A stretch of 64,000 nucleotides of DNA, taken from the NCBI RefSeq assembly GCF_006345805.1, contig NC_043012.1:32364001-32428000 (forward strand). Direction: 5' to 3'. Below, piece by piece: positions 6,740 to 64,000 of the stretch (position 1 is the first letter of the stretch; each line of letters starts with the position of its first letter). This stretch comes from Octopus sinensis. Taxonomy: Eukaryota. Below the pieces are notes generated by a model, which did no database searches, had not been told where the DNA came from, and saw only the letters and a program-made list of their open reading frames with translations. A program made the translations under genes and the position numbers.

Positions 6740-7249
6740 TTCCTTCTTGGGACACATAACTCTACTTGTGAAGACCTGTTGAGGCAAGTGAAAATCAAAA
6801 AAAAATCAAAAAATCAAATCAAAATCGAAATCAATCAACATCAATGGAATTTGTAGTTATGGTACCAGTGCCGGTGGCACATAAGAGAACCATCCAAACG
6901 TGGCCGTAGCCAGTACCGCATTGACTGGCCTCCGTGCTGGTGGCACATAACAAACACCATCCGATCGTGGCCGTTGCCAGCCTCGCCTGGACTCCGTGCC
7001 GGTGGCACGTAAAAAGCACCATCCGAGCATGGCCGTTTGCCAGCCTTGTCTGGCACTTGTGTCGGTGGCACATAAAAAGCACCCACTACACTCACGGAGT
7101 GGTTGGCGTTAGGAAGGGCATCCAGCTGTAGAAACACTGTCAGATCTGACTGGCCTGGTGCAGCCTTCGGGCTTCCCAGACCCCAGTTAAACCGTCCAAC
7201 CCATGCTAGCATGGAAAGCGGATGTTAAACGATGATGATGATGATGATG
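6740..7249 (+). mobile_element. Abundant (GAT)n-tailed retroposon with internal ~45-bp minisatellite
   Basis: Repeated gtgccggtggcac(g/a)taaaaagcacc units, gttaggaagggcatccagctgtagaaac core, (GAT)n tail. Many other copies: 3331-3610, 5935-6347, 9812-10284, 17505-17674, 20688-20826, 23193-23590, 28785-29017, 29703-30170, 32390-32657, 35490-36007, 52258-52586, 57945-58106, 62546-62945. Confidence 0.85.
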
Positions 7250-7411
7250 AATTCTGTTGTGGTGGGCAGGTCTTCTTTAGTATAATTTGCACCACCATAT
7301 CTTGGTCGTCAGTCATGTCCTTCATAAGGGCCAGCATTTTGAAATTGGCCTTCAATGCTTCATCCCATGTCTTCCTGGGTCCCCTTCTTCCGCAACTTCC
7401 CTCCATTTTAA

Positions 7412-41800: not shown

Positions 41801-44800
41801 AGTATATCTGTGATAATTCAATCTTGTTTTATGCTATTCATAGTTGCCCCGATATACACCCTACTACTCAATTGTGTATCTACAGTGCATTGGTAAACTA
41901 CCTCCTTCCTGAGGCATTGATTACCAATACACATTTATTTTTGTTTCTGCAATTACAAAGATTAACAGAATGAGGAAATCTAAGATTGGTCTCCACCCCT
42001 ATACTACCATTCACATTATAAGTGTTACAATTGTTATCATCATCCAAACCCAAAATCAACGAATGAGTTAATTTCACATTATCGGCTATATTCCTTCACT
42101 AGTACTAGTATTGGTAGTAGTAGTATGATCTATTACATTTATATTATCTCTGACAGGTACGGTGCACTCATTATTAGTAAGGGGGTTGTTCACATTCGTT
42201 CTAAGAAAGGTACTGTTCCTATTATTATTAGAGGGGCACATTTCCCTGGTCTAAATTCAATTTTCTATCCTTATAGAAGTGATCCAGTTCCTGTTATTAA
42301 AAGAGGAGATAATGGTGGCTAGATTATGGGTAATGCTATATCCCACTCTAACAGTACTGTTGTTAATTAAAGAACTAAATTTATTCTTATCCTTACCAAA
42401 ATGCCTAAATATAACATTACAGAGATGACGCCTTATTTTGTGTTAAGAATACATCAAATAGGAGATTAGATCTTCTGAAAAAAAGAATAAATAAATTTTT
42501 TAAAAGTTTCGGCCTATCCATTATCATTGAAAGTGAAAATTATTCTGCTAATTATTTAGATGTTAATTGTAACATTACTAATGGTTTACATAAACCCTAT
42601 ATTAAACCTAATTCTAACCTAATATATATTAACCGTTCAAGTAATCACCCCCCTCAAATTAAAAATGCACTAGTGCGTAGCATTAGTCAGAGAATTTCTA
42701 GTTTATCCTCTAACGAGGAAATTTTAACAAGCATTGTGATAGATACAATGCAGCATTGCTTAAGGCAGGATACAAAAGTAAGATATGGTTTATACCTAAG
42801 GGGAACCCTCCTAATGGAGGTAGAACTATCAGGAACAACACCAATAGATTTAGGATAAGCAACAATATACATATGAATAGTAAAAATGGAATATATGATA
42901 ACACCTATAATAAATGTAGAAGTGATGTTAACCTCGGAAAGGTGAACGGTAGCTCAAATAGATCTGAGCATACGGGTAATAGTAGTAATATTAATAATAA
43001 TATACTAATTAAAACTTATGGTAGACATGATAATGGTAAAGTTTACTTGCGCAATAACCATGGGAATATTGATATAGTTAGATATAACAATGACAGTGGT
43101 AAGAATAGTAATCCTATGGGTTGGTCTAGGAATAGGATTTTTACAAATAACAATAATTCTATAGGCAATCCTATTTCTGATAAGGATACACTATGGTTGA
43201 TTATCCCATATGCAATGCAGATTAAAACAAACATAGTGAGAGCTTTGCATAATGTTATATTTAGGCATTTTGGTAAGGATAAGAATAAATTTAGTCCTTT
43301 AATTAACAACAGTACTGTTAGAGTGGGATATAGCATTACCCATAATCTAGCCACCATTATCTCCTCTTTTAATAACAGGAAACTGGATCACTTCTATAAG
43401 GATAGAAAATTGAATTTAGACCAGGGAAATGTGCCCCTCTTTAATAATAATAGGAACAGTAACTTTCTTAGAACGAATGTGAACAACCCCCTTACTAATA
43501 ATGAGTGCACCGTACCTGTCAGAGATAATATAAATGTAATAGATCATACTACTACTACCAATACTAGTACTAGTGATAGGAATATAGCCGATAATGTGAA
43601 ATTAACTCATTCGTTGATTTTGGGTTTGGATGATGATAACAATTGTAACACTTATAATGTGAATGGTAGTATAGGGGTGGAGACCAATCTTAGATTTCCT
43701 CATTCTGTTAATCTTTGTAATTGCAGAAACAAAAATAAATGTGTATTGGTAATCAATGCCTCAGGAAGGAGGTAGTTTACCAATGCACTGTAGATACACA
43801 ATTGAGTAGTAGGGTGTATATCGGGGCAACTATGAATAGCATAAAACAAAGATTGAATTATCACAGATATACTTTTAGAAATAAAAATAGAATGTACTCT
43901 ACAGGGCTAAGTGCTTACATTTGGGAACTTAAAAGTAAGAACTTAGATTTTAGATTAAACTGGAAAATACTAACTTCAGCACCTGTGTATAATGGAAAAA
44001 ATAAAAAATGCTCTCTATGTATTAATGAAATTTTTTTCATTATTAAAGCGGGTCGGCAATTATTAACAACATTAATGAAAAAAAACTTCTTTTGCATTCA
44101 TAGGCTACCGTTCACCTTTTCTAGATTCAAATAGAACTTAGCACTTCCACTATTATTAATTTTTTAACTCCCTTCTTTAACTAACTATACCTGTGGTCTT
44201 CTATAATTCTTAAGTATACAATTATAAATTTATAATTTTATAATTTTTATAGCTACATTTGTATAATAATAATAGATGTGTCTAGTATTATTTGTTTCTT
44301 GTTTTTTGTATGTGGGTTTTTGTTTGTTTTTTAAGGGAAATGCAATATGACACGATATAACATATTCACTTTGGTATTTGCCTTGTAATATGTGATTTTT
44401 GAAGTTTTCTAATATTGCATAGTATATTGCATAGTATATATGTATATCTTGGTTAGATACCTAGCTCTAGATAATGTAAGGATATTGTATAATATGTAAT
44501 ATATGAGAGCCTTTTATAAGTTTGGTGTGTTTAGGTAGAGAATATAGGTTTTTTGTATGTGTTTTTTGGAAGGTTTTTATTGTATATTTGGTCTTTCTTT
44601 GTACTCACCTTAATTTGTATCTTATGCTACTCACTAATAAACCTTTTTCATGTTTTTCATTTTTTTCATTTTCTCATTTACATACATTTGGCTTTATAAA
44701 TATTACCAGCCTTATATATTTAGTTTATATCTATAGTCCTCTGGATCTGTACTTTAAATTATCCTTCCATACATATTTACTTTCAACAATATAACATATA

Positions 44801-46703
44801 TTCACTTTATTTATTTTTTATTTTATTTTATTTTTATTTTATTGTAATGTTATCAATCTCTGCATTTAGTCTTCTAATTATTTATTTATTTGCCTATTTA
44901 AGTGTAGATGTTTACATACATATCAAGTCATCTAATTTGTTATCTATTTATTTTTTACTTATTTACTTATACTAGGGTAGTTTTATACATACATATCTAT
45001 CATTTATTTTTATTTAATTTTAATAATATATGAATACATATATACTGGTTTGTACTTATATGTGTATAACCGTATTTATTCCTTAGTTTTTATTCCTTCT
45101 TATTTATCTTTTCACATTTTACCTTAAGTATTTATAATATAAATTTTTAAAAATTTCTGTGATGTTCTCATAAGCGTTTACATTAGTACTTCCCCTTCTA
45201 TTTTTTAATGCCTAAACTGGTATATTATGGCATTAAATTTATTAAGTAAATAAGTGATTTATTTATAATATATAAATTAATATATATTTTATATTTTATA
45301 ATTTAGCGTACTTGGAATCATAACAAACTTACGATAAATCTAACAACCGTATGTTTACTATGCAACAAACCGGTGTTATAAATTTTAAGTTACCCATGAA
45401 ATAATTTTCTGACTTAGTAACATATTGATATTTAAAAATATATTTATATCTAAATTAAATATTTTATGAAATGCATGGGTGGTTCTTTTTTCGTTATTTG
45501 AAGCACAGTTATAATTTTGAAGGACTAAATGGTAGCATAGCTGCTTCCCTTTTTGTTTATCTATGTGCTAGTTGTTGCTTGTGATTATGTATGTGTATAA
45601 GTGTATGTATATACATACAACTATGTGTGTATGTGCGATTGATCTGTAGATGCGTGTATGAATATTGGCGTTCCGTGACTAACCAACCGTATAATTTTCT
45701 TTTGTGATTTAAATTTCAAACCAATAGCCAATCGAATTAATCTAAATTTTCTTTACCTAGTGATCAGCATTTCTAAAACTCATAGTTATTTCGATCTTGA
45801 AAGGATGGACTTGGTGCTAACTTAACTGTATCTATTATTATTATTATTATTTTTTTATTATTATTATTATTATTAATATTAATAGTAATTTTTATTAACT
45901 TTCATAGCTTTAGAATTTTATGAACTGAACCATGGTTTTAATTATTATTTTTCATCTCCCTATGTGTTAGTTTTTTTTAAAAAAAAACTATTAGCCAAAT
46001 ATGTATAATATCGGTACTTATTAATATTAGTATATACACTGATATATATTTTGTTTTATTTTGTTCTGTTTACCTTCCTTTATTGTACCAATAAGTATTA
46101 TATTATATAAGTGTAGCATTATGATGTATAAGTTTTTATATTTTTTATATTTTACATTTTTATATTTTTATATTTATATGTATATGGTTATATTATATTT
46201 TTCACAATTATAACAAATTTAATTTAATTCTCTGAAGAGGCCGTGGGGCATCCTTGTTAATGCCTCATTTATACCTGCCTTTATGGCTAGAGGTTAAATG
46301 AGGTATGACTGCCCTCACTGCCGAAACAGCTGTCAGTTTTGATTTAATTGCATATTATATTTGAAAAATTTTTTACTTATATCTCTTTATCTTTTTACTA
46401 TTACTGTATATCTCATTTTATATAATGCCTTTACTCATATGTAATGGTGTATTAAAGTATTGATTGGGTATCATCGGATAGTTGATGTTTTATTGATTTA
46501 AGTATGTTTCTCCATTCTCTAATTTTGTAGTATTAATTTACGGTAATATTATTACCTTTACCCATATAATACAATAGATGAACTGATTGTTTGACAATTT
46601 TTAACATCTATGTATTAATCTTGTTGGGTACCTATCTGGCAGTATATTGGATATATATTATCCCATGGTGGGTTGAATTTTCAACCCCTATCTCATTTTA
46701 TAA

Positions 46704-46772
<69 letters not shown>

Positions 46773-50300: not shown

Positions 50301-53300
50301 CCTCCTGGTTCTGTGACACAAATTTATTGTTTTAAAGTGATCTAAATTACAATCTTCCATTAAAACTGTACGTCTGTTTTTTCAGACCAGCTTAATAATG
50401 ACAAAGATATTTTACTAAAAGGGTTAGAGTAAAAGCTACAGCCGAGAAATGACTATTGTTTATGAACTTCATAGCTTCAGAATTAAAACACAAGAAAGAA
50501 AATCACACACACACACACACACACACAAATACATACATGTTTTTTCTTTATGTTGATTTGTAATAAAAACAATTTAACATTCAGCTGAAGAATTACTTAA
50601 CCCTTTTGTTACCAACCCGGTTGAAACTGGCTCTGGCTCTGAATACAAGTCACAACTTATGTTCCTAACACTAGCTGAATGATAATTAAGTTATTTTAGT
50701 AAATTCTTTGTTGTATTTAAAGTAATTGAAAGAAACACAGAGCATCTCAAAATAAATACAGTAAGGAAAGGGTTAATACTTTTTGTGATTTTACATGAAG
50801 ATTAGTGACAGTGACTCGGAAGTTTCCGTTTGCTAGCTTTTGCCAGACTATCAAATGAAGGCATGCAGGCCAAAATTTCCAAGTCACTATTACCACTTTC
50901 TTGTAAAAGTATAAAACAACAACAGCAACAAACACACACATACATACACACAGAATCATTATCATCATTTAATGTCCATTTTCCATGCTGGCATGGGTTG
51001 GATAGTTTGACAGGAGCTAGCAAGCCAGAGGACTGCACCAGGCCTTGACTGTCTGATTTGGCATGGGTTTCACAGCTGGATGCCCTTCCAAATACCAACC
51101 ACTCTATAGCGTGGACTGGATGCACCAGCACTGGCAGGGCCACCAAATAACTTGCAAGACGAAGACCTTTTGAAAGGGTGGGTATTGGAGGAGGTGGCCT
51201 TGTACCAAAAGGACAGAAACAGGTGTCTTGCAGTAGAGGAAATACATGGTTACCCTAGTCCAAGTGGGGTAGAGAGACAGAATGAAAAAGAGCGGGTGTG
51301 GAAGAGAGTGAAAGTGTGAGAGCACAAGAGATAGCAAGGGTGAAAGAAAGAGAGAGAGAGAAAGATGATGGCAACGTGACAGAGCATAATCGTAAGGTAA
51401 GCAGGATGCGAATACAAATGGGATGGTAGAGTATTGCCAAGGGTGTATGGGGTCCACATAAACGCAAAGGTGTGTGTGGGGGGTTGCGGTGACTGGTGAA
51501 ACCTGGGTGTATACAAGAGATGGGGGAACCAGATAGCAATGGTACAGTAAGCAGGTCAGTGAGGACAGGATTGGGCTGCAGGAGTGGGGCAGGGAGAGAT
51601 AAGCATAATGCCTGAAAAAGCGGAAATGTGATGAAGAGAAGAGGGGATGTAGTTTAGTCTATTGGGGTAGGATGAAGAAATTCTATATATATATATATGA
51701 TGCATTTAATTTCCAGTTTTTAAAACTTTATTTTGATACTTTGTATGTGAAAATGTTTTCGAACTACATTAACTCTGAGTCAGAGATGTTGATTTTGTAT
51801 TCCAGTGTCACATAATAACTGAAGATAATGATTAATTCAGTAAGAAAATGGGAATTTTGAACACTGGCTCATGATCTAAATTTGGAAGAAGTAGAGTCAA
51901 CGTAATCAAAACTGGTCTCTTTTATCTTATCATTTAATGTCCGCTTTCCATGCTAGCATGGGTCTTTTATCTTATTATTTACTTGTTTCTGTCATTGGGC
52001 TGTGGCCATGCTGGGGCACTGCCTTGAAGGGTTTAGTCAAACAAATTTACCCCAGTACTTATTTTTAATTTTAAGCCTGATACTTATTCTATTGGTCTCT
52101 TTTGCTGAACTGCTAAGTTATAGGAACATAAACAAACCGACACTATTTGTCAAGTGATGATGGAGGACAAATACATATACACATATATTCACATATGTAT
52201 GTGTGTGTGTGTATATATACATATGTTTGTGTGTATATATGTGTGTGTGTATATATATCATCATCATCGTTTAACGTCCGTTTTCCATGCTAACATGGGT
52301 TGGCTGGTTTGACCGGGGTCTGGGAAGCCAGGAGGCTGCACCAGACTCCAGCCTGATCTGGCAATGTTTCTACAGCTGAATGCCCTTCCTAACACAGACC
52401 ACTCTCTGAGTGTAGTGGGTGCTTTTTATGTGTCACCGGCACAGTTGCCGGGGGGGGGGGGGGGCTGGCAACGGCCACGATCGGTTGATGCTTTTTACGT
52501 ACCACCGGCACGGAAGCCAGTCAACCATATACAGATGGTGCTTTTTACGTGCCACTGGCACAGGTGCCAGGAGGCTGGCAACAGCCTATATATATATATA
52601 AAATAATAATAATAATAATAATACTACAGAGATGGAATTTATAAATATTACAATGTATCACTATGTGCGTTTGCACAAGTCACATGTTTCTTAAGATCAT
52701 AGTCCATATTCCTGGGATGATTACAGTTGAGTCCATAGTATCCCTGGACATCAGGCAGATCATGTGCATGCCTTCATTTCTTTAGGTGATATGGCATTAG
52801 CGAATGTTTAACAACAGGTTGTTTATCAATTTTGACCAAGGAAAAGATTGATCAGAGTATGAGGCGATGGAAGGAGAGGAAGGAATGGGGGCACGTGAGG
52901 TGATGTTGGACTTATTCTGATATCTGCGTATGCAGATGTCAAGTTGTCCTGACTGCCTTGCTGATTCTGTTATTATTCATTCAGAAAACAAACACAAGAA
53001 AATGTTGAAATAATAAAAAGAAAAATAATGTAAAGATTAGTTATTGTTGCATTAATTATTATATTAATTATAATGCTACATGAATAAATAAATGTCTGAG
53101 AAGCATTGTTAATAAGCTTGTAAGTTTTCAGGATATTACACTCTCATTGTTGGAGATGAAACATTTTTTAAAATATATATATTAGCAACAAAGGCAGTAT
53201 CAATACCTATTTCTCTACTACTCACAAGGGGCTAAACACAAAGGGGACAAACAAGGACAGACACATGGATTAAGTCGATTATATTGACCCCAGTGCGCAA

Positions 53301-56124: not shown

Positions 56125-56797
56125 AACATATATACGACAGGCTTCTTTCAGTTTCCGTCTGCCAAATCCACCCACAAGGCTTTGGTCAGCCTGGGGCTAT
56201 AGTAGCAAACACTTGCCCAAGGTGCCACACAGTGGGACTGAACCTGGAACCATGTGGTTGGTAAGCAAGCTACTTACCACACAGCCACTCCCGCGCACTG
56301 AAAGTACATGAGTAAGAAAGAGGGGGAAGTAGACTGAAAATAGAAGAAAAGTGGTGGTAGTAGTAAGAGGAGTACTCACTCAGTAAATAATGGGATCCAA
56401 TTTTCTTCAGATCCCGAAATTTCAAATAGAGAGACATAACAGCAACATCTCTTGCTATTTTGATGCCAATTGTACTGAAGGATTGCATTTTCTAGAAAGT
56501 AAACAAAAAATTTATTTCAATACAATAATTAGAAGGTGAAAGGAAATAAAGGCCAAGAAAACAGTATTGTGATGTAATGGGAAAGTGTTTACTCACATCA
56601 ATGTTAGAACATGCATAGTTCCAGCCACAGATTTTTACTTCACTTGAGTACATGGTCATTGACATGAAACACAGAGTCACTGTTAATGTCCCGATGATCA
56701 CTTCCCATGGATGTAAGGCACAGAATTTGCCATAAGTCCAGAACATCGATTTTAACATCACACTAGCTACGTTTAGACTTCTTGTGAGTGCTACCAT
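13724..56797 (-). CDS. HMGCR: 3-hydroxy-3-methylglutaryl-CoA reductase, class I, ER membrane-bound; 21 coding exons; 2481 nt = 826 aa + stop (813 aa from second Met at 56758)
   Basis: Manually spliced exons all have AG acceptors, GT donors and consistent phases. Diagnostic motifs: [33 protein letters not shown] (catalytic Glu), [24 protein letters not shown] (catalytic Lys), GQD (catalytic Asp), GTVGGG, GELSLM, LVKSHM (catalytic His). Confidence 0.97.
13860..14240 (-). mobile_element. Penelope-type terminal-repeat remnants (two partial tandem copies) with decayed hammerhead cores
   Basis: Duplicated ttatttacatttgacagatatttgtc..catct..gttgttaacac segment. The minus strand reads CAGAAGA-AGGGTG-gagggtatat-CAGTT-GAAACGTGTTAAC at about 14045-14090. 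Confidence 0.55.
14850..15210 (+). mobile_element. tRNA-derived CORE-type SINE (octopus OR2-like)
   Basis: A box TGGCTGTGTGG, B box GGTTCAGTCCC, CORE-like GTGGCACCTTGGGCAAGTGTCTTCT. Further copies at 16510-16920, 19130-19284, 20015-20190, 49445-49745, 55885-56297, 62290-62490. Confidence 0.8.
15221..15372 (-). CDS. HMGCR: HMGCR coding exon 20 ([51 protein letters not shown]), 152 nt
   Basis: GELSLM...LVKSHM catalytic His; cacAG acceptor, AG|GTAAGA donor. Confidence 0.97.
16510..16920 (+). mobile_element. CORE-type SINE, full length, with internal (TA)/(TG) microsatellite
   Basis: Colinear with 14850-15210. Confidence 0.85.
18325..18556 (+). mobile_element. CR1-clade LINE 3' end (same family as 22085-22450)
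   Basis: Near-identical ctgaagcatggaaca...gttgtggtgcacctgagcactgtatacaataatttcattat sequence. Confidence 0.8.
18619..18777 (-). CDS. HMGCR: HMGCR coding exon 19 ([53 protein letters not shown]), 159 nt
   Basis: Catalytic Asp (GQ|D) and GTVGGG; ctcAG acceptor, GTAAGT donor. Confidence 0.98.
20392..20596 (-). CDS. HMGCR: HMGCR coding exon 18 ([68 protein letters not shown]), 205 nt
   Basis: [17 protein letters not shown] and NAH.ANIV motifs; tacAG acceptor, GTAAGT donor. Confidence 0.98.
21758..21864 (-). CDS. HMGCR: HMGCR coding exon 17 ([36 protein letters not shown]), 107 nt
   Basis: cis-loop SGNYCTDKK; tttcAG acceptor, GTAAGT donor inside the Trp codon. Confidence 0.97.
22085..22450 (+). 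mobile_element. CR1-clade LINE 3' end with (ATT)n tail
   Basis: [46 protein letters not shown] is the CR1 ORF2 terminus. Confidence 0.85.
22485..22590 (-). CDS. HMGCR: HMGCR coding exon 16 ([35 protein letters not shown]), 106 nt
   Basis: [12 protein letters not shown](H)-binding motif; tttcAG acceptor, GTGATA donor. Confidence 0.98.
22660..22950. repeat. Degenerate ~40-bp minisatellite filling most of HMGCR intron 15
   Basis: About 8 units of (ctc)agctgtt....aatgtga; two units (tagctgttccattagatgtgaaacatgtagctgtga) are nearly identical. Confidence 0.75.
22965..23036 (-). CDS. HMGCR: HMGCR coding exon 15 ([24 protein letters not shown]), 72 nt
   Basis: ctgcAG acceptor after a poly-T tract, GTGAGG donor; aligns with VKAWLE...F..IKEAFDSTSR. 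Confidence 0.94.
24813..25038 (-). mobile_element. Mariner-derived non-autonomous element
   Basis: TIR ACGAGGTGGTGCTGAAAAGTTCCTGGCTT with a degenerate partner near 25004-25038; minus strand encodes the transposase C-terminus [22 protein letters not shown]. Confidence 0.8.
25408..25737 (-). mobile_element. Non-autonomous Helitron-like element
   Basis: Minus strand: A|TCTCTATGTATATAAACGG...CTAGCAC-tatgacccggc-GTGCTAG|T (5' TC, 3' hairpin + CTAG, A|T target). Confidence 0.72.
25746..25831 (-). CDS. HMGCR: HMGCR coding exon 14 ([29 protein letters not shown]), 86 nt
   Basis: [10 protein letters not shown] motif; atcAG acceptor, GTAAGT donor. Confidence 0.97.
25905..26093. mobile_element. piggyBac-type MITE (family 1) in TTAA
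   Basis: TTAA at 25901-25904 and 26094-26097; internal sequence matches 7412-7633. Confidence 0.78.
26623..26781 (-). CDS. HMGCR: HMGCR coding exon 13 ([53 protein letters not shown]), 159 nt
   Basis: ENVIG dimerisation motif and ATTEGCL catalytic Glu; tgtAG acceptor, GTAAAT donor. Confidence 0.98.
26938..27016 (-). CDS. HMGCR: HMGCR coding exon 12 ([26 protein letters not shown]), 79 nt
   Basis: ttttcAG acceptor, GTGAGT donor; LP.++Y+Y motif. Confidence 0.94.
27100..27490 (+). mobile_element. RTE-clade LINE 3' fragment
   Basis: [13 protein letters not shown]...[28 protein letters not shown]...RPRKTYNEV...DRDIWH. Confidence 0.8.
27810..28620 (-). mobile_element. RTE-clade LINE RT C-terminal fragment
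   Basis: [14 protein letters not shown]...[17 protein letters not shown]...[16 protein letters not shown]...[22 protein letters not shown]. Confidence 0.88.
29217..29435. mobile_element. piggyBac-type MITE (family 2) in TTAA
   Basis: TTAA|CCCTTTTGTTACC...GGTAATGAAAGGG|TTAA. Confidence 0.8.
30657..30772 (-). CDS. HMGCR: HMGCR coding exon 11 ([39 protein letters not shown]), 116 nt
   Basis: ttacAG acceptor, GTAATG donor; aligns with [23 protein letters not shown]...ERGVSIR. Confidence 0.95.
31436..31560 (-). CDS. HMGCR: HMGCR coding exon 10, linker ([42 protein letters not shown]), 125 nt
   Basis: gacAG acceptor, GTAAGT donor; restores phase 1 to 0 between exons 9 and 11. [14 protein letters not shown] resembles the EC-L-IL motif that precedes the catalytic domain. 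Confidence 0.8.
31852..31961 (-). CDS. HMGCR: HMGCR coding exon 9 ([36 protein letters not shown]), 110 nt
   Basis: ctgcAG acceptor, GTGATT donor; TM8 with the KYIFF motif. Confidence 0.92.
33071..33225 (-). CDS. HMGCR: HMGCR coding exon 8 ([52 protein letters not shown]), 155 nt
   Basis: ttacAG acceptor, GTTTGT donor; GLV.VH..SRW and WQFYL motifs. Confidence 0.94.
33852..34234 (-). mobile_element. Head-to-tail partial dimer of the Deu/Nin-like SINE with one 16-bp TSD and (TAAA)n tail
   Basis: TSD GCTGTCAATATTTATT at 33836-33851 and 34235-34250; B-box/Deu segment present twice. Confidence 0.8.
34388..34504 (-). CDS. HMGCR: HMGCR coding exon 7 ([39 protein letters not shown]), 117 nt
   Basis: tgtAG acceptor, GTAAGA donor; KSNPV equals human KPNPV (K248 region). 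Confidence 0.94.
34833..34939 (-). CDS. HMGCR: HMGCR coding exon 6 ([35 protein letters not shown]), 107 nt
   Basis: tttcAG acceptor, GTAAGT donor; SVLANY...MTF.PAC motif. Confidence 0.96.
36738..36843 (-). CDS. HMGCR: HMGCR coding exon 5 ([36 protein letters not shown]), 106 nt
   Basis: tttcAG acceptor, GTAAGT donor; aligns with [24 protein letters not shown]. Confidence 0.96.
37150..37725 (+). mobile_element. Degenerate reverse-transcriptase fragment of a second, divergent Penelope-like element
   Basis: Frameshifted [39 protein letters not shown]...[12 protein letters not shown]...[15 protein letters not shown]...[14 protein letters not shown] at 37496-37507; interrupted at its 3' end by a SINE. 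Confidence 0.7.
37730..38085 (+). mobile_element. Same-head SINE, tail type 3
   Basis: cccagtggttagggcagcggactcgcgg head; tail cttcctacgcaaccgct...gaagaccgct also occurs alone at about 4720-4890. Confidence 0.78.
38232..38420. repeat. Four-unit ~42-bp minisatellite with (CT)n spacers
   Basis: caatgtaactgc at about 38257, 38296, 38338 and 38386. Confidence 0.85.
38808..39123 (-). mobile_element. Same-head SINE, tail type 2
   Basis: Head and body match 3970-4354; 3' part differs (...gcctgctcacttagccagc...ggtcacggtcatc). Confidence 0.8.
39143..42419 (-). repeat. Inverted copy (left arm, 3277 bp) of the Penelope 3' portion 43250-46533 (3284 bp)
   Basis: Reverse complement matches throughout (the identical 90-aa ORFs at 40880-41152 minus and 44522-44794 plus show this). 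Differences are scattered 1-bp indels and a few transitions. Spacer 42420-43249. Confidence 0.97.
39332..39455 (-). ncRNA. Second hammerhead copy in the inverted arm, sense to the HMGCR pre-mRNA
   Basis: Reverse complement of 46222-46345 with the core intact (CTGAAGA 39445-39439, GAAA 39354-39351, GTC 39345-39343); two 1-nt indels in the helix II extension. Confidence 0.82.
42418..46533 (+). mobile_element. Penelope-like retroelement, 5'-truncated at the RT catalytic motif; RT C-terminus + linker + GIY-YIG endonuclease + long 3' region
   Basis: Starts YRDDALF (42418), then NYLDVN...[24 protein letters not shown]...[26 protein letters not shown]...[12 protein letters not shown], and VVY...[18 protein letters not shown]...[12 protein letters not shown]...CSLCINE (43739-44134). 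Two 1-bp frameshifts near 42722 and 43745. Confidence 0.93.
46222..46345 (+). ncRNA. Type-I hammerhead ribozyme (Penelope-associated) with extended helix II
   Basis: CTGAAGA (46232-46238), GGC/GCC helix II closing, GAAA (46323-46326), palindromic helix III ACAGCTGT, GUC cleavage triplet (46332-46334). Confidence 0.85.
46706..46770. repeat. (TA)n microsatellite at the right boundary of the Penelope insertion
   Basis: Uninterrupted TA run; a matching (TA)n run at 39125-39145 marks the left boundary. Confidence 0.95.
46771..47349 (+). repeat. Tandem duplication unit 1 (RLE-LINE 3' end + RTE fragment), bounded by (TA)n
   Basis: [26 protein letters not shown] is a typical RLE-LINE C-terminus; minus-strand MLHGSETW is an RTE motif; near-identical to 47400-47980. 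Confidence 0.9.
47400..47980 (+). repeat. Tandem duplication unit 2
   Basis: Identical 84-aa ORFs at 47020-47274 and 47651-47905 (offset 631 bp); differs from unit 1 by single-base indels. Confidence 0.9.
48325..48409 (-). CDS. HMGCR: HMGCR coding exon 4 ([28 protein letters not shown]), 85 nt
   Basis: ttacAG acceptor, GTAAGC donor; aligns with [25 protein letters not shown]. Confidence 0.96.
49980..50772. mobile_element. Cluster of three piggyBac-type MITEs (49980-50144, 50274-50423, 50601-50772)
   Basis: Each begins TTAA|CCCTTTT and ends AAGGG|TTAA (middle copy TTAG). Confidence 0.78.
53795..54138 (-). mobile_element. tRNA-derived SINE, separate family
   Basis: Minus-strand GTGAAGGCGCATGGCTCAGTGG A box, GAGTTCAAATCC B box, CTTGAGCAAGACACTT central motif. 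Confidence 0.75.
54283..54370 (-). CDS. HMGCR: HMGCR coding exon 3 ([30 protein letters not shown]), 88 nt
   Basis: tttcAG acceptor, GTAAGT donor, phase 1 to 2; aligns with GIAGLFTIFSSFVFS. Confidence 0.93.
55885..56297 (-). mobile_element. CORE-type SINE, full length
   Basis: Reverse complement of the 16510-16920 family. Confidence 0.85.
56380..56491 (-). CDS. HMGCR: HMGCR coding exon 2 ([37 protein letters not shown]), 112 nt
   Basis: ttctAG acceptor, GTGAGT donor; aligns to the TM2/sterol-sensing region (human [24 protein letters not shown]). Confidence 0.92.
56597..56797 (-). CDS. HMGCR: HMGCR coding exon 1 ([67 protein letters not shown])
   Basis: Matches the vertebrate N-terminus MLSRLF...HPWEVIV...KICGWNY. 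Donor GTGAGT at 56596. An acceptor (pyrimidine tract + AG at 56810-56809) lies 11 nt upstream of the first ATG, implying an upstream non-coding exon. Confidence 0.95.
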
Positions 56798-56898: not shown

Positions 56899-57292
56899 GG
56901 ATCTTTTCAGTTTGAACGGCAGTTTTTTCTAGCAGTGTCATATGAAATTGTCACCCATAATTATGACCCTAGTATCGATCTATTGCATTTCAATCTGTTT
57001 TAGGGTTAGGGGGAAGAGTATCTTTTTTTCTTCAGAAATGTAAATAAACCCAATCTGTTTCATATTCATACGGCACAGAATGTTTTCACCTCAATAGACA
57101 TCATTGATTGGTTGAAATTGCAGAAATTGAAGAAAAAAAAAACAACAAATATCTTACAAACTATAGAATTTTCTCAATAAAGCCAAGAGAAAAAGATGTT
57201 TTATAAACACATTCTACCAGTATACGAAGTTTAAAAGTGTTTAGTCACGTGGAAATTATTTTAAAAGACTGCCGTTCAAACCGAAAAGATCC
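56899..57292 (-). mobile_element. MITE copy 1, ~29-bp TIR GGATCTTTTCGGTTTGAACGGCAGTTTTT, 8-bp TSD AAGGCAGT
   Basis: TIRs at both ends; TSD at 56891-56898 and 57293-57300; opposite orientation to copies 2-5. Confidence 0.92.
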
Positions 57293-58254
57293 AAGGCAGT
57301 TCTTATCAAAAAGAGAAATCAATGATATGAGTATGAATATGACTGTTATTGATTTAAACAAACGACATACTGCTCATTTCAAATTCCCTATTATTGCAAA
57401 CAGGAAAATGATAGTACCCTAGTGAATTACTGGTACACTAAATTTCCTACTAAATTCACCATCAATTAAGATGTTAGTTTCAGTACTCACACACTTCAGC
57501 AGATTTTGCACATAAAAGTCAACCCATGCCAGCATGGAAAACGGACATTAAAGGATGATGATGAAGAAGTCAGAAGAAATATGATAAATTTTAAATGTCA
57601 CGGGTATCTTTAGTGTTACTAACTAGAGACTGTCTTCATGTTGTGGAACTTGGTGCTTCAATGAGTATTTAGTTATCTGATCAACTGAATTACTATCTGA
57701 CAAGCTTCGACATAGTTCTTCACTTACTCAGTTTCAATCCCAGGACTTGGAGTGACCTGAGACTATGGTAAAAGACATCCAAGATATCACTCAGTGGGAT
57801 CAAACGGAAGATTTTAGTTCTGTGAAGCGAACTGCTGAACCATTTGGTCACGTAGAGGTTGGCAAAATCAGTCTGGCCCATCTCTCTTCATTAAAATTCA
57901 TGACTACAAACTAATGAATCATTTGTTTACAGTACTGCTACACCCACAACACTCAGGGAGTGGTTGGCGTTAGGAAGGGCATCCAGCTGTAGAAACACTG
58001 CCAGATCAGACTGGGCTTGGTGCAGCCTCCTGGCTTCCCAGACCCTGGTCGAACCGTCCAACCCATGCTAGCATGGAAAACGGACATTAAACAATGATGA
58101 TGATGATTGAAGATGTCAAAGTCAGTAGCTTCACTGTATCTAAGATTGCATCTGACAAGACCTTCATTAATTATCTATACTAGACCCTTTATTAATTATC
58201 TGGACTACAATGTTAGTTGTCCGGTACCACATCCACATGATATCTGCACTCAAA

Positions 58255-58670
58255 AGATCTTTTCGGTTTGACCGACAGTTTTTTTTAATAATTTCCACGT
58301 AACTAAACACTTTTAAACTTTGTATACTGGTAGAATGTGTTTGTAAAACATCTTTTTCTCTTGGCTTTATTGAGAAAATTCTATAGTTTGTAAGATATTT
58401 GTTGATTTTTTTCTTCAATTTCTGCAATTTCAACAAATCAATGATGTCTATTGAGGTAAAAAAAAAAACATTCTGTGCCGTATGAATATGTCCCTCGTTT
58501 AAGAAACAGATTGGGTTTATTTACATTTCTGAAGAAAAAAAGATACCCTTCCCCCCACCCCTAACCCTAAAACAGATTGAAATGCAATAGATTGATACTA
58601 GGGTATTAATTATGGGTGACGATTTCATATGACACCGCTAGAAAAACTGCTGTTTAAACCGAAAAGATCC
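58255..58670 (+). mobile_element. MITE copy 2, TSD CACTCAAA
   Basis: TSD at 58247-58254 and 58671-58678. Confidence 0.92.
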
Positions 58671-59270
58671 CACTCAAATTCTAAATAAATATTTTTTTCA
58701 GGTAGGAATTTTTCTTTCAAGTGATATGATTTATATATATTTTTTTTTTAATTCAGCTAAAGAGACATAGTCTTAAATAGTCTTAATTGAATGCAAATTT
58801 TTAGGGAAGCCATGTTTTAATAAAATTTCTTTTGTTTTTTATGTTACAGAAAAAAAGTTCCAAATAATATTTTTGTGCTTATTTGCAAGAAATGGTTCAG
58901 AAAGAAGTATCACAGAATAGGTCAGCTGGGAAGCATAAAGATAAAAATAGTTTTGTATGTAATAATTGTAGTTACAGACTCCTAGAAGAGAAGTGTATGA
59001 ATAGTGCCATTGATGTATTTTGGGTAAGTGATAAAATTATAATGCTTAAGTTGTTGATAAAGAGCTACTAAACATTACAAATAGTTTAACTCTCGCACCT
59101 GATGACTATGGCCTTGACACCAGATTAAGATAGAGCGGATTTGTATCATTTCTTATAAATGGGATCTAAATTTTAAAAATTTACACATCATCATCGTTTA
59201 ACATATATTTTCCATACTGGCATGGATTGGATGGTTTGACAGGAGCTGTCCAGACTTCAATTGTCTGTTC

Positions 59271-59679
59271 GGATCTTTTCGGTTTGAACGGCAGTTTTTT
59301 AACATAATTTCCATGTAACTAAACACTTTTAAACTTCTTATACTGGTAGAATGTGTTTATAAAACATCTTTTTCTCTTGGCTTTCTTGAGAAAATTCTAT
59401 AGTTTGTAAGATATTTGTTGTTTTTTTTCTGCAATTTCAACCAATCAATGATGTCTATTGAGGTGAAAAACATTCTGTGCTGTATGAATATGTCCCTCGT
59501 TTAAGAAACAGATTGGGTTTATTTACATTTTTGAAGAAAAAAAGATACCCTTCCCCTCACCCCTGACCCTAACCCTAAAACAGCTTGAAATGCAATAGAT
59601 CAATACTAGGGTCATAATTATGGGTGACAATTTCATATGACACCGCTAGAAAAAATTGTCATTCAAACCGAAAAGATTC
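59271..59679 (+). mobile_element. MITE copy 3, TSD GTCTGTTC
   Basis: TSD at 59263-59270 and 59680-59687. Confidence 0.92.
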
Positions 59680-60032
59680 GTCTGTTCTAATATAGTTTTT
59701 ATGGCTAGCTGCCTTTCCTAACACTAACCACTCTACAGAATATAACGCGTGCTTTTTACGTGCCATTGGCACAAGTGCATTTATGCAGCACCAGCACAAG
59801 AGTTCAATCGACACTGAACTAACAGCTGTAAACAAAATTACGTGCAATTTACTTCTAAAGTAAGCTAAAAATAATGGCCATCAAATATCAAAAGGAAAAA
59901 AATTATAACATTGACAAAAGTCATTCAAAAATTGTAACTCTATTTGCAAAAAGCGAAATTACTTTCTTGCCAACCTAATAAATGAAAACATATAGATATA
60001 TTATTTGCAATTTAAAGTTTAATAGTTACATT

Positions 60033-60446
60033 GGATCTTTTCGGTTTGAACGGCAGTTTTTTAAAATAATTTCCATGTAACTAACACTTTTAAACTTCGT
60101 ATACTGGTAGAATGTGTTTATAAAACATCTTTTTCTCTTGGCTTTATTGAGAAAATTCTATAGTTTGTAAGATATTTGTTTTTTTTTTTCTTCAATTCTG
60201 CAATTTCAACCAATCAATGATATCTACTGAGGTGAAAACATTCTGTGCCGTATGAATATGTTCCTCGTTTAAGAAACAGATTGGGTTTATTTACATTTTT
60301 GAAGAAAAAAGATACCCTTCCCCTCACCCCTGACCCTAACCCTAAAACAGCTTGAAATGCAATAGATCAATACTAGGGTCATAATTATGGGTGACAATTT
60401 CATATGACACCGCTAGAAAAAATTGTCATTCAAACCGAAAAGATTC
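60033..60446 (+). mobile_element. MITE copy 4, chimera of copies 5 (5' part) and 3 (3' part)
   Basis: Left flank GTTACATT (copy-5 TSD), right flank GTCTGTTC (copy-3 TSD); internal variants switch between 60262 and 60299. Confidence 0.9.
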
Positions 60447-60800
60447 GTCTGTTCTAATATAGTTTTTATGGCTAGCTGCCTTTCCTAACACTAACCACTC
60501 TACAGAATATAACGCGTGCTTTTTACGTGCCATTGGCACAAGTGCATTTATGCAGCACCAGCACAAGAGTTCAATCGACACTGAACTAACAGCTGTAAAC
60601 AAAATTACGTGCAATTTACTTCTAAAGTAAGCTAAAAATAATGGCCATCAAATATCAAAAGGAAAAAAATTATAACATTGACAAAAGTCATTCAAAAAAT
60701 TGTAACTCTATTTGCAAAAAGCGAAATTACTTTCTTGCCAACCTAATAAATGAAAACATATAGATATATTATTTGCAATTTAAAGTTTAATAGTTACATT

Positions 60801-61219
60801 GGATCTTTTCGGTTTGAACGGCAGTTTTTTAAAATAATTTCCATGTAACTAAACACTTTTAAACTTCGTATACTGGTAGAATGTGTTTATAAAACATCTT
60901 TTTCTCTTGGCTTTATTGAGAAAATTCTATAGTTTGTAAGATATTTGTTTTTTTTTTCTTCAATTTCTGCAATTTCAACCAATCAATGATATCTACTGAG
61001 GTGAAAACATTCTGTGCCGTATGAATATGTTCCTCGTTTAAGAAACAGATTGGGTTTATTTACATTTCTGAAGAAAAAAGATACCCTTCCCCCTAATCCT
61101 AACTAACCCTAACTCTAAAACAGATTGAAATGCAATAGATCGATACTAGGTTCATAATTATGGGTGACAATTTCATATGACACCGCTAGAAAAAACTGCT
61201 GTTCAAACCAAAAAGATCT
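60801..61219 (+). mobile_element. MITE copy 5, TSD GTTACATT
   Basis: TSD at 60793-60800 and 61220-61227. Confidence 0.92.
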
Positions 61220-61797: not shown

Positions 61798-62945
61798 TTA
61801 ACCAGCGAACTCTAATGTTTTGAATTTGTTTACGTGACGGTTCGTTTATTAAACATTAGTAAGAATATCTGCAGTGTACTTTGTTAATATAATGCCACTT
61901 ACTCCGTTACCAAGTTTTGATTGGGGATAGAACGGCAAGAGATATGGAACAAGGAATGAGGAGAATTAAGCTATCAAAGTTTTAATAGGGGACAGGACAA
62001 AGTATGGGAGATAAGAATGTGAATTGAACGGGAGAAACGAATAATTATCATTATAGAGAGACAAATAATTATCATAATAAACTTAACGAGATAGGACTAA
62101 AATTAAAATTATATTTGAGGGGACAATATCAATGGTTAGCTCATGAAAAACAAACAGTAAATAAATAATACATTTTAAGTGTTAATGGCGAATGTAGTAC
62201 GAGGGATCGAAAGAAATGAAATGAGTAGATCTTAGCTTGCTTTGGACATCGTTGGCCGATATATATATATATATATAATATACATGTATATGTTTTTGCT
62301 TGTGCCCCTACCATCACTTGACAACTGATGTTGGTGCGTCTACATCCCTGTAACTTAGCGATTTGGCAAAAGCGGTCAATAGAATAAGTACTAGGCTTAC
62401 CAAGAATAAGTCTTGGGGTTGATTTGTTTGACTAAAGGCGGTGCTCGAGCATGGCCACAGTCAAATGACTGAAACAAGTAAAAGAGTAAAAAGTAAGGCT
62501 GAAGAGTTGTAGAGAAATGGATATATATATATATATATATATATATCATCGTTTAACGTCTGCTTTCCATGCTGCCATGGGTTGGACGATTTGACTGAGG
62601 GCTGGCGAACCAGATGGCTGCACCAGGCTCCAATCTTGATGTGGCAATGTTTCTACAGCTGGGTGCCCTTCCTAACACCAACCACTCCCTGAGTGTAGTG
62701 GGTGCTTTTATGTGCCACCGGCACAGGGGCCAGTCAAGAAGTACTGGCAATGGCCATGCTCAAAAGGTGTTTTTACGTGCCACTTGCACAGGAGCCAGTC
62801 TAGCGGCACTGGCAACAATCCCACTCAAATATTTTTCACGTGCCACCAGCAACGCTGGTAATGATCACGCTCGAATGGTGCTTTTTTCACGCCACTGGCA
62901 CGGAAGCCAGTCAGCTGCTCTAGCAACGATCACGCTCGGATGGTG

Positions 62946-62982
<37 letters not shown>

Positions 62983-63429
62983 CACACACACATACATATA
63001 TATATATGTAGAGAGAGAAGGAGAGGGAGAGAGTACTGTTCTATTACTGGTAGGATCAACAGAAAAAGTACTCCATTCAGTGAAAAATAAATATTGAATA
63101 AACACAGAATTTAAATGTGAACAACTGTAAGTTTCATGCTCTGATAGAACAGCAATCATACAAGCTTGTCAAGTATGCTGTGTACTATCCAGTAACCGTT
63201 CAGGCTCAAGATAAACATGGCTGCTCTCTAAAAACTGTAAGAAAGAACAGGCCTGAACAAGGGGGGGGGAAATAGAAAGGAACAAATAAAAGCAAAGCTT
63301 GGTTGGAAGTAAAGGAAATAAGACTGGTGTCCCTTTGGCCTGTTAAAATGAGAATCAGCAATGGTTGGTGAAGGTTAATTCGATGAGGAAGAGTTAAAGT
63401 TTGTAAGGCTATATACCTAATCCAGACAT

Positions 63430-63635
63430 GTGGTCTTCTCTAGTTCAAAAGTAGAAACTTGGCAAGGTGTTTGCATTTTGTGAAAAGCTCTAGTCTTGAG
63501 TCTAGTAATTTAGAGGAGTTCTTAGATTTATCCTTTTTAAATCTAAGAATTTCACTGACCTGAACTTGAGATTGGAATGCTTCACAAAATGCAAACATCT
63601 TTTCAAGTTTCTACTATTGAACTAGAGAACACTAC
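63430..63635 (+). other. 206-nt long imperfect hairpin with G.T-biased pairing on the + strand
   Basis: Arms paired base by base (for example 63436-63484 with 63581-63629, and 63515-63530 with 63538-63553); 7-nt terminal loop TCCTTTT. Confidence 0.85.
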
Positions 63636-64000
63636 CCACTCTGGGTTAAGCCATGCTTAACAAACTTTAATCTTTCCCCATCAAATTAACCTTCACAAAC
63701 CATGGTTAATTCCCATTGTAACAGGTCAAAGCGACACAAATCTTATTTCCTTTCCCTCCAAGCTTTTCTTTTTCTCATTTCTTCCTTTTTTTTCTTTATC
63801 TGTTTTGTTCTCTCATACTTTTTCTCCAACAGCAGCCATGTTCATTTAGAGCCTGAAAGATCAAAGAAGAAGGAGGAGGAGGAGGAGAGAGAGCGAGGGA
63901 GAAAGGAGGAGAAAGAGGCAGAGAAGAAAAAATAAAAATCAACAAAGCAATTCTTAATTTTTGAGAATTTTAAGCCACTTGATTTTGAGGTCCTTAGAAA

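What the first reader, a model, noticed from the sequence alone, without database searches (positions are those of the whole stretch)
63430..63635. 206-nt hairpin whose mismatches are G.U wobbles only on the + strand
Seen: manual pairing gives 10 G.T pairs (left-arm positions 63432, 63462, 63467, 63491, 63493, 63497, 63498, 63511, 63516, 63518) and no A.C pairs within helices. There are also single C.C, A.A and C.T mismatches, small bulges and one internal loop. Neutral transition decay of a DNA palindrome should give G.T and A.C about equally, so 10:0 is roughly 1 in 1000 for a given strand. The sequence matches no repeat in this window. Inference: selection on a + strand RNA structure (long miRNA/hpRNA precursor or editing substrate). 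Alternatives are a genomic copy of an A-to-I edited dsRNA (all wobbles fit A-to-G) or strand-biased C-to-T deamination.
Basis: partly seen in the sequence, partly recalled or inferred. Interest (0 to 1): 0.75.

Follow-up and report, generated by a model that had tools for sequence, protein, structure and literature searches.

The report
Decaying palindrome upstream of octopus HMGCR
The 206-base hairpin is real, but it is only the inner third of an old 659-base palindrome upstream of the octopus HMG-CoA reductase gene that changes as fast as the DNA around it, so its one-sided surplus of G·U pairs is weak evidence for a functional RNA.

Summary
The hairpin exists. Three things were missed.

1. 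It is the core of a 659-nt imperfect palindrome, 63199-63857. The outer arms lean the other way (G·U-type:A·C-type 10:15). The whole palindrome is balanced at 22:18, and the two strands fold almost equally (-312.6 vs -304.9).
2. Three A·C-type oppositions in the core sit inside loops.
3. Runs this lopsided are common. 9 of 32 unrelated inverted repeat pairs in this window hold a 12:3 run, and neutral simulation gives a strand gap this large 4-5% of the time.

The window is Octopus sinensis, about 6.4 kb upstream of HMGCR. [quoted passage not shown] One signal remains. Since the species split, the core gained 7 G·U-type changes and 0 A·C-type; 6 of the 7 are C→T on the + strand. Chance in a neutral palindrome is most likely (~0.65). 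A local strand-biased C→T mutation process (~0.17) fits better than selection on an RNA (~0.08).

The parts
63199..63857 (.). Whole imperfect palindrome (659 nt); the flagged hairpin is its inner third
   Evidence: The self-inverted blastn hit 63199-63857 is 72% identical over 683 columns. Arms I1, I2 and I14 appear, and the arm alignment. MFE is -312.6 on the + strand and -304.9 on the - strand. It is orthologous in O. vulgaris (L129 3733-4390) and O. bimaculoides (L127 2359-2983).
63199..63429 (.). Left outer arm
   Evidence: It pairs with 63636-63857. The outer arms hold 10 G·U-type and 15 A·C-type oppositions, 22 transversion mismatches and 7 indels. O. bimaculoides has a 34-nt deletion at 63247-63280.
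63430..63635 (+). Core hairpin as flagged
   Evidence: The + strand MFE is -110 with 90 pairs, 11 of them G·U; the - strand MFE is -85.9. Homologous oppositions are 12 G·U-type, 3 A·C-type and 6 transversions over 97 columns. The sequence is identical in O. vulgaris and differs at 11 positions in O. bimaculoides.
63531..63537 (+). Apical loop (UCCUUUU) above a 16-bp uninterrupted stem (one G·U pair; 63515-63530 with 63538-63553)
   Evidence: Taken from the MFE structure and the pair table. One substitution falls in the loop (63534, T in O. sinensis, G in O. bimaculoides).
63636..63857 (.). Right outer arm
   Evidence: It pairs with 63199-63429. O. sinensis and O. bimaculoides differ here by 3.6%.
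56597..56758 (-). Context only: first coding exon of HMG-CoA reductase. The ATG is at 56758 and a 3' splice acceptor lies at about 56806
   Evidence: Pfam HMG-CoA_red and Sterol-sensing hits on window ORFs. tblastn maps the exons from 56758 down to 15220 on the - strand. An octopus mRNA contig, L121, aligns as 21 blocks from 56805 to 13595. The annotated gene start in O. sinensis corresponds to window 56797.

Best explanation
The feature is an old, single-locus, imperfect DNA palindrome of 659 bp. It began either as a local inverted duplication or as a foldback or MITE-like insertion. It lies in non-coding DNA about 6.4 kb upstream of the annotated start of the HMG-CoA reductase gene of Octopus sinensis. 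It was already present, with its arms already diverged, in the common ancestor of O. sinensis, O. vulgaris and O. bimaculoides, and it has kept decaying at the local neutral rate. The hairpin potential is a by-product of that origin. The + strand G·U surplus in the inner 206 nt is a chance fluctuation in the direction of transitions, offset by the opposite lean in the outer arms. If the region is ever transcribed, either strand would form a long dsRNA and be an ordinary ADAR substrate, as many octopus inverted repeats are.

Shown: the palindrome, its orthology, its neutral rate and the balanced totals. Inferred: its origin, and that the core bias is chance.
For: **Structure and balance in one genome**
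- The palindrome extends to 63199-63857.
- The whole-palindrome count is 22 G·U-type to 18 A·C-type, and the two strands fold almost equally, -312.6 vs -304.9.
- Arm-to-arm mismatch density is 21.6% in the core and 21.8% in the outer arms.

**How unusual the core is**
- The local excess of 9 is typical of 40 random signs (P = 0.52).
- Neutral simulation gives a standard deviation of about 12 kcal/mol for the strand difference, P(|ΔΔG| ≥ 24.1) = 0.04-0.05, and a mean MFE of -106 to -110. That equals the observed + strand value.
- Among 32 other inverted pairs of interspersed repeats in this window, 28% hold a 15-transition run of 12:3 or more. Their totals are 455:476.

**Comparison across species**
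- The palindrome is orthologous in three species.
- Core divergence is 5.3% against 6.4% for non-core (p = 0.65). A model in which only WC↔G·U changes are tolerated predicts about 4 substitutions; 11 were observed (Poisson P = 0.003).
- There are no compensatory pairs.
- O. bimaculoides carries a 34-nt deletion in one outer arm.
- In O. bimaculoides the whole palindrome is again balanced, 18:20.
- The reconstructed ancestral core was more stable on both strands (+ about -122, - about -105 to -107), so both are eroding.

**Literature**
- Porath et al. report that the octopus genome is exceptionally rich in loci able to form long dsRNA (PMC5625713).
- A survey of molluscs, which sequenced O. bimaculoides small RNAs, found no evidence of an endo-siRNA pathway (PMC12479628).
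Against: - The core bias does not stop at the ancestral mismatches. Changes since the species split, polarised against the partner arm, are 7 G·U-type to 0 A·C-type in the core, against 3:6 in the outer arms (Fisher p = 0.011; 7:0 two-sided p = 0.016).
- Pooling events from both lineages, a change-point test that allows for the choice of boundary gives P = 0.017.
- On the three-species alignment, 99.4% of cells pair on the + strand and 87.2% on the mirrored - strand.
- Polarisation assumes that the perfectly paired state is ancestral. No outgroup was available.
Confidence: 0.65

Rival explanations
1. A strand-asymmetric mutation process confined to the core, mainly C→T on the + strand. For example, cytosine deamination could act while that strand of the central palindrome is single-stranded, through hairpin or cruciform extrusion, an R-loop, or local + sense transcription. 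This would produce G·U-type oppositions with no selection on any RNA.
For: - The total substitution rate in the core equals the flanks, and only the direction is skewed. That is what a mutation bias predicts and what purifying selection does not.
- G·U-type changes are in excess, 7 observed against 3.4 expected at the flank rate (P = 0.055), rather than A·C-type merely missing.
- 6 of the 7 polarised changes are C→T on the + strand, none in a CpG context. 5 of those 6 lie in the right arm, beside tandem changes at 63602-63603 (GC→TT) and 63559-63560 (CC→TT).
- C/T against G/A differences in the core are 7:1.
Against: - The flanks show no such bias (C/T 57, G/A 71) and the outer arms are 6:5, so the process would have to be limited to about 200 nt.
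- No mechanism or transcript is shown.
- The numbers are small, and polarisation rests on the partner arm only.
- 7:1 is p ≈ 0.07.
Confidence: 0.17
2. One reading: the core is transcribed from the + strand as a long hairpin RNA. It could be a young small-RNA precursor or a regulated dsRNA/ADAR substrate, and selection tolerates G·U but removes A·C and other disruptions.
For: - The + strand hairpin is 24-27 kcal/mol more stable than the - strand in both O. sinensis and O. bimaculoides.
- In the MFE pairing, all five one-sided changes between the species are G·C↔G·U, so they keep + strand pairs and break - strand pairs.
- Recent changes are 7 G·U-type to 0 A·C-type.
- The core has no indels among the three species.
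Against: - There is no conservation above the neutral rate, 5.3% vs 6.4%.
- Arm mismatch density equals that of the outer arms.
- There are 0 compensatory pairs.
- Disrupting transversions became fixed in both lineages: 63602 gives C·G→C·U, and 63598 gives A·U→A·A.
- The + strand stability equals the neutral simulation mean.
- No Rfam family reaches its threshold. The best is MIR8007 at 48.8 bits against a gathering score of 195.
- The length (206 to 659 nt) is far from the ~70-nt animal pre-miRNA.
- Molluscs show no endo-siRNA pathway (PMC12479628).
- The only annotated gene nearby is on the opposite strand.
Confidence: 0.08
3. The locus is a genomic retro-copy of an A-to-I hyper-edited dsRNA, so that the wobble G's record edited adenosines.
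For: By definition, every G·U pair can be derived from A·U by A→G on the + strand.
Against: - Only 1 of the 7 changes that can be polarised is A→G; 6 are C→T.
- The 5' neighbour of the wobble G is G in 3 of 11 cases, which ADAR disfavours.
- The core is embedded without a break in a larger palindrome whose outer arms lean the other way.
- The bias accumulated step by step in two lineages rather than in one event.
Confidence: 0.01

Closest known systems
Inverted-repeat loci of octopus that can form long dsRNA, the main substrates of ADAR hyper-editing (Porath et al. 2017, PMC5625713; Zolotarov et al. 2022, PMC9699675)
   Same: A long, nearly continuous intramolecular duplex made by two inverted copies in non-coding DNA. 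Porath et al. report that such loci are unusually common in the octopus genome.
   Different: No transcript or editing is shown here. The locus lies upstream of the annotated gene rather than in an intron or 3'UTR. Its arms are a single-locus palindrome, not two copies of a dispersed repeat seen elsewhere in the window.
Foldback elements and MITEs, and small-RNA genes born from them (from general knowledge: human mir-548 from Made1, plant MIRNA genes from inverted duplications)
   Same: A palindromic sequence of a few hundred bases whose transcript would be a long hairpin. It is old enough to carry many mismatches.
   Different: No target-site duplication. No second copy in 64 kb or in three 54-66 kb orthologous loci. 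It is present at the same site in all three species, so there is no sign of mobility. No small-RNA evidence.
Drosophila-type hpRNA (endo-siRNA hairpin) loci (from general knowledge)
   Same: A hairpin of hundreds of bases derived from an inverted duplication, more stable on one strand.
   Different: A survey of mollusc small RNAs, which sequenced O. bimaculoides libraries, found no evidence of an endo-siRNA pathway (PMC12479628). No target gene with similarity to the arms was seen in the window.
Canonical animal microRNA precursors (MirGeneDB criteria; the 164 O. vulgaris genes of PMC9699675)
   Same: An imperfect hairpin with G·U pairs and a small apical loop.
   Different: Three to ten times too long. 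No Rfam miRNA family reaches threshold. No arm-specific conservation, since the core changes at the flank rate. Fragments of the hairpin are absent from that paper's supplementary text.

Membership tests
Structured RNA under purifying selection | Sequence or structure conserved above the local neutral rate | tested here: not met
   O. sinensis vs O. bimaculoides: core 11/206 = 5.3%, non-core 127/1970 = 6.4%, Fisher p = 0.65.
Structured RNA under purifying selection | Compensatory (both-sides) base-pair changes | tested here: not met
   0 of 90 pairs changed on both sides with the pair kept. Power is low, because there are only two distinct sequences.
Structured RNA under purifying selection | One-sided changes keep the pair on the claimed strand only | tested here: inconclusive
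   All 5 one-sided changes are G·C↔G·U on the + strand and break the pair on the - strand. One pair is also lost (G·U→A·A). The counts are small: 7:0 gives p = 0.016, and the independent branch gives 4:0, p = 0.06.
Canonical animal miRNA | Hairpin of about 60-70 nt matching a curated family model | tested here: not met
   The hairpin is 206 nt within a 659-nt palindrome. The best Rfam hit is MIR8007 at 48.8 bits against a gathering score of 195. All hits are generic hairpin matches.
Canonical animal miRNA | Reads from both arms with 2-nt offsets and uniform 5' ends | not testable with these tools
   No read data can be mapped here.
hpRNA / endo-siRNA locus | Long inverted-repeat hairpin | tested here: met
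hpRNA / endo-siRNA locus | 21-23-nt Dicer duplexes, and an siRNA pathway in the organism | not testable with these tools
   No reads are available. The literature reports no endo-siRNA pathway evidence in molluscs; the survey included O. bimaculoides small-RNA data (PMC12479628).
MITE / foldback transposon | Target-site duplication at the ends of the inverted repeats | tested here: not met
   The best candidate is 5/8 at a shifted boundary, which is chance level over about 150 trials. At this age a duplication could have decayed.
MITE / foldback transposon | Multiple dispersed copies | tested here: inconclusive
   None in the 64-kb window or in the three orthologous loci. Whole genomes could not be searched.
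MITE / foldback transposon | Presence/absence differences between related genomes | tested here: not met
   Present at the same position in O. sinensis, O. vulgaris and O. bimaculoides.
ADAR dsRNA substrate | Long, nearly perfect intramolecular duplex | tested here: met
   90 pairs in the core and about 264 in the whole palindrome.
ADAR dsRNA substrate | Transcribed, with clustered A-to-G mismatches in reads | not testable with these tools
   No RNA-seq is accessible. No gene other than HMGCR is called within 10 kb in three annotations.
Retro-copy of an edited RNA | Wobble G's derive from A, with the ADAR neighbour preference | tested here: not met
   6 of the 7 polarised changes are C→T. The 5' neighbour is G at 3 of 11 wobble G's.

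The most novel reading that the evidence does not exclude
The inner 206 nt is a + strand long hairpin RNA specific to the genus Octopus, lying upstream of HMGCR and antisense to it. Weak selection would tolerate G·U pairs but remove A·C-type changes. It could be a young small-RNA precursor or a regulated dsRNA/ADAR substrate, born from an inverted duplication and caught while the rest of the palindrome decays freely.
Probability: 0.07. Interest if true: 0.55.

Novelty: new member of a known kind. Interest (0 to 1): 0.2.

Why it matters
As it stands, the locus is one more of the many dsRNA-capable inverted repeats of the octopus genome, so its value is mainly as a method lesson. A G·U-only hairpin carved out of a larger palindrome is not evidence of RNA selection by itself. 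The boundaries and the 'helices' are defined by the very asymmetry being tested.

The one point worth following is that the + strand C→T direction continued independently in two lineages while the overall rate stayed neutral. If that holds up with more species, it would point to one of two things. One is a strand-specific mutation process at palindrome centres. The other is a very young hairpin RNA gene forming from an inverted duplication, a route well described in plants but poorly documented in molluscs.

Tried and rejected
- **Rfam, permissive threshold, on 62800-64000.** Only generic sub-threshold miRNA-hairpin hits, including on the neighbouring (CT)n(AT)n microsatellite.
- **Exact look-ups of the ORFs across the hairpin and right arm, and a homology search with the 52-aa hairpin ORF.** Nothing found. 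This is uninformative, because that collection holds only annotated proteins for eukaryote genomes.
- **Two metagenome scans, a 26-mer and a 17-mer from the arms.** None, then 120+ chance hits with no extension beyond 32 nt.
- **Target-site duplication search.** None found.
- **ADAR neighbour motif.** Not met.
- **Search of the octopus miRNA paper's supplements for hairpin fragments.** None found.
- **HMGCR homology search with concatenated exons.** It returned only short fragments from other phyla. The orthologues were reached another way: exon 1, then a representative protein, then its 90% cluster, then the genomic loci.
- **The 5' UTR exon (131 nt) of a related octopus mRNA.** It could not be placed in the window or in 10 kb upstream in any of the three species. 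Whether the palindrome lies in a first intron therefore stays open.
- **A more distant cephalopod's contigs (L122-L126).** They align only at exon 1 and reach just 1 kb upstream.

Full report
**1. The observation**

Positions 63430-63635 fold on the + strand into a single long hairpin: MFE -110 kcal/mol, z = -17.9, and no shuffle folds as well. The - strand reaches only -85.9. The C·C, A·A and C·T mismatches are at 63435·63630, 63449·63616 and 63463·63602. Nothing else in the window resembles the sequence.

**2.

The inverted symmetry does not stop at 63430 and 63635. It runs from 63199 to 63857, a 659-nt imperfect palindrome that is 72% identical over 683 aligned columns.

Aligning the left arm to the reverse complement of the right arm gives these oppositions:

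| Region | G·U-type | A·C-type | Transversions | Mismatch density |
|---|---|---|---|---|
| Whole palindrome | 22 | 18 | 28 | |
| Core | 12 | 3 | 6 | 21.6% |
| Outer arms | 10 | 15 | 22 | 21.8% |

The three A·C-type oppositions in the core are 63485·63580, 63488·63577 and 63502·63563. The hairpin's outer edge is set by C·A, A·C and T·C at 63427-63429.

The whole palindrome folds almost equally on both strands, -312.6 vs -304.9. The outer arms therefore favour the - strand by about 16 kcal/mol. Mismatch density is the same in the core and the outer arms.

**3. How unusual the core is, within one genome**

- For a region fixed in advance, 12:3 gives p = 0.035 and the whole palindrome gives p = 0.64. 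The largest excess over any sub-interval of the 40 ordered transitions is 9, which is typical of random signs (P = 0.52; anchored at the centre, 0.31).
- I simulated strand-symmetric neutral decay of a perfect palindrome with 100-nt arms to the observed divergence. The standard deviation of the strand energy difference is about 12 kcal/mol. A difference of at least 24.1 occurs in 4-5% of runs. The mean MFE is -106 to -110, so the + strand is no more stable than expected and the - strand is simply on the low side.
- As an empirical control I used 32 other inverted pairs of diverged interspersed repeats in this window, which are tens of kilobases apart and cannot be selected hairpins. Nine of them (28%) hold a run of 15 transitions split 12:3 or worse. 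Their totals are 455:476.
- Two of the wobble pairs (63497·63568 and 63498·63567, CUUGAG against CUUGAG) are the signature of one CpG/CpG site decaying to TpG in both arms. CpG is 2 observed against 22 expected in the palindrome.

**4. Organism and context**

- A SINE-like ORF next to the palindrome matches a hypothetical protein of Octopus vulgaris.
- Pfam screening of all ORFs of at least 50 aa found HMG-CoA reductase and sterol-sensing exons.
- Exon 1 as a query found P0088. Its 90% cluster holds HMGCR of O. vulgaris/sinensis and of O. bimaculoides, and those gave the genomic loci L127-L129.
- The window is 100% identical to O. sinensis CM016874.1, with window position w equal to record position 32,364,000 + w.
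- The palindrome lies 6.4 kb upstream of the annotated gene start in O. sinensis, 5.6 kb in O. vulgaris and 7.0 kb in O. bimaculoides. No other gene is called in the 10-kb flank in any of the three annotations.
- A related octopus mRNA, L121, has a 131-nt 5' exon spliced onto the acceptor at about 56806. I could not place that exon anywhere in the 10 kb upstream. Whether the palindrome sits in a first intron, and would then be transcribed as the - strand, remains open.

**5. Comparison across species**

The palindrome is orthologous in all three species, 98.5% identical in O. vulgaris and 90.4% in O. bimaculoides. It is therefore a single inherited locus, not a recent insertion.

Divergence between O. 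sinensis and O. bimaculoides:

| Region | Divergence |
|---|---|
| Core | 5.3% |
| Left outer arm | 4.6% |
| Right outer arm | 3.6% |
| Unique flanks | 5.0-8.5% |
| Core, counted | 11/206 |
| All non-core, counted | 127/1970 (Fisher p = 0.65) |

- A model in which only WC↔G·U changes are tolerated predicts about 4 substitutions in the core. Eleven were observed (Poisson P = 0.003).
- O. bimaculoides has lost 34 nt of the left outer arm.
- On the three-species alignment no pair shows a compensatory change.
- The O. bimaculoides core again has 12 G·U-type and 2 A·C-type oppositions, and its whole palindrome has 18:20. It folds at -112.4 on the + strand and -85.8 on the - strand.

**6. The residual signal**

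The eleven core differences are not random in direction.

- In the MFE pairing, five are G·C↔G·U toggles: 63432·63633, 63433·63632, 63462·63603, 63505·63560 and 63487·63580. One pair goes from G·U to A·A (63467·63598). One mismatch goes from C·U to U·G (63463·63602). None is a WC↔A·C toggle.
- The same helices mirrored onto the - strand pair in 87.2% of cells, against 99.4% on the + strand.
- I polarised each change by taking the state that pairs with the partner arm as ancestral. This is an assumption, because there is no outgroup. It gives 7 G·U-type changes, 3 on the sinensis/vulgaris branch and 4 on the bimaculoides branch. It gives 0 A·C-type changes and 2 disrupting transversions, one per branch. 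The outer arms give 3:6.
- 7:0 is p = 0.016 two-sided. Core against outer arms is p = 0.011.
- Pooling events from both lineages, a change-point test that allows for the choice of boundary gives P = 0.017, and the range test gives P = 0.29.
- Six of the seven are C→T on the + strand, none at a CpG. Five of those six are in the right arm, next to tandem changes GC→TT (63602-63603) and CC→TT (63559-63560).
- The flanks show no such bias: C/T 57 against G/A 71.

**7. Interpretation**

Purifying selection on a + strand hairpin can only remove changes. It predicts a lower rate, and G·U-type changes at no more than the neutral rate. I observe the neutral total rate, with G·U-type changes above expectation (7 vs 3.4, P = 0.055) and A·C-type changes below it (0 vs 3.4, P = 0.035). 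There are disrupting transversions in both lineages. Both strands have eroded since the ancestor, which folded at about -122 on the + strand and about -105 to -107 on the - strand.

That pattern fits chance, or a local + strand C→T mutation bias, better than selection. The 'retro-copy of an edited RNA' alternative fails because the changes are C→T rather than A→G, and because 3 of the 11 wobble G's have a 5' G.

Priors also weigh against a small-RNA precursor:
- No Rfam family reaches its threshold.
- The object is 3 to 10 times longer than an animal pre-miRNA.
- Molluscs show no endo-siRNA pathway (PMC12479628).
- Long dsRNA-capable loci are exceptionally frequent in the octopus genome, so many hairpins are available to show a 2-sigma asymmetry (PMC5625713).

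My weights are: neutral palindrome with a chance bias about 0.65, local strand-biased mutation about 0.17, + strand RNA under weak selection about 0.08, and the remainder unassigned.

**8. Origin**

I found no target-site duplication. There is no second copy in the window or in the orthologous loci, and no presence/absence difference among the three species. I cannot tell a local inverted duplication from a fossil foldback or MITE-like insertion. Whole-genome copy number could not be tested.

**9. Limits**

- There are only two effectively independent lineages, because O. vulgaris is identical to O. sinensis in the core.
- Polarisation has no outgroup.
- No expression data, no MirGeneDB search and no whole-genome search were possible.
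- The pairing of 63580 depends on whether the gapless or the MFE register is used (A·C→A·U or G·C→G·U). Both readings favour the + strand.

Noticed in passing
window 39145-46705 (arms 39143-42419 and 43250-46533): A ~7.5-kb insertion with 3.29-kb inverted arms that are 99% identical sits in an HMGCR intron. It carries ORFs at 42714-43772 (353 aa, N-rich, no Pfam hit) and 43739-44131 (131 aa), and parts of both are duplicated in the other arm. [quoted passage not shown] It looks like a very young mobile element specific to O. sinensis.
   Followed up: partly
window 13595-56805, - strand: A complete HMG-CoA reductase gene. A related octopus mRNA aligns as 21 blocks, the ATG is at 56758, and the sterol-sensing and catalytic domains are both present. 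The window corresponds to O. sinensis CM016874.1:32,364,001-32,428,000.
   Followed up: yes
window 56806 and upstream: A strong 3' splice acceptor (polypyrimidine tract followed by AG) lies just upstream of the ATG exon. A related octopus mRNA carries a 131-nt 5' exon that I could not find within 10 kb upstream in three Octopus genomes. The HMGCR first exon is therefore unannotated, distant or poorly conserved.
   Followed up: partly
window 56900-57294 and 58256-61218: Four copies of a ~400-nt repeat, spaced about 770-1000 bp apart (87-89% identical), lie in inverted orientation to a fifth copy at 56900-57294, directly upstream of the HMGCR ATG exon.
   Followed up: no
window 3335-3609, 6041-6348, 6869-7250, 9811-10116, 23192-23557, 32395-32658, 35568-36008, 52257-52565, 62545-62946 and others: A dispersed SINE-like repeat of ~260-430 nt occurs in both orientations. 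Chance ORFs across it share the motif [13 protein letters not shown]. One such ORF is annotated as a 'hypothetical predicted protein' in O. vulgaris, which is probably a repeat-derived gene model.
   Followed up: partly
window 63559-63560 and 63602-63603; 63247-63280: Inside the palindrome there are tandem double substitutions between species: CC in O. sinensis against TT in O. bimaculoides, and TT against GC. O. bimaculoides also has a 34-nt deletion that removes the poly-G tract of the left outer arm.
   Followed up: partly
window 62943-63040 and 63858-63925: Compound microsatellites flank the palindrome, (CT)n(AT)n(AC)n on the left and a purine-rich (GGA/GAG)n on the right. They give spurious sub-threshold miRNA-family hits in Rfam.
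   Followed up: no
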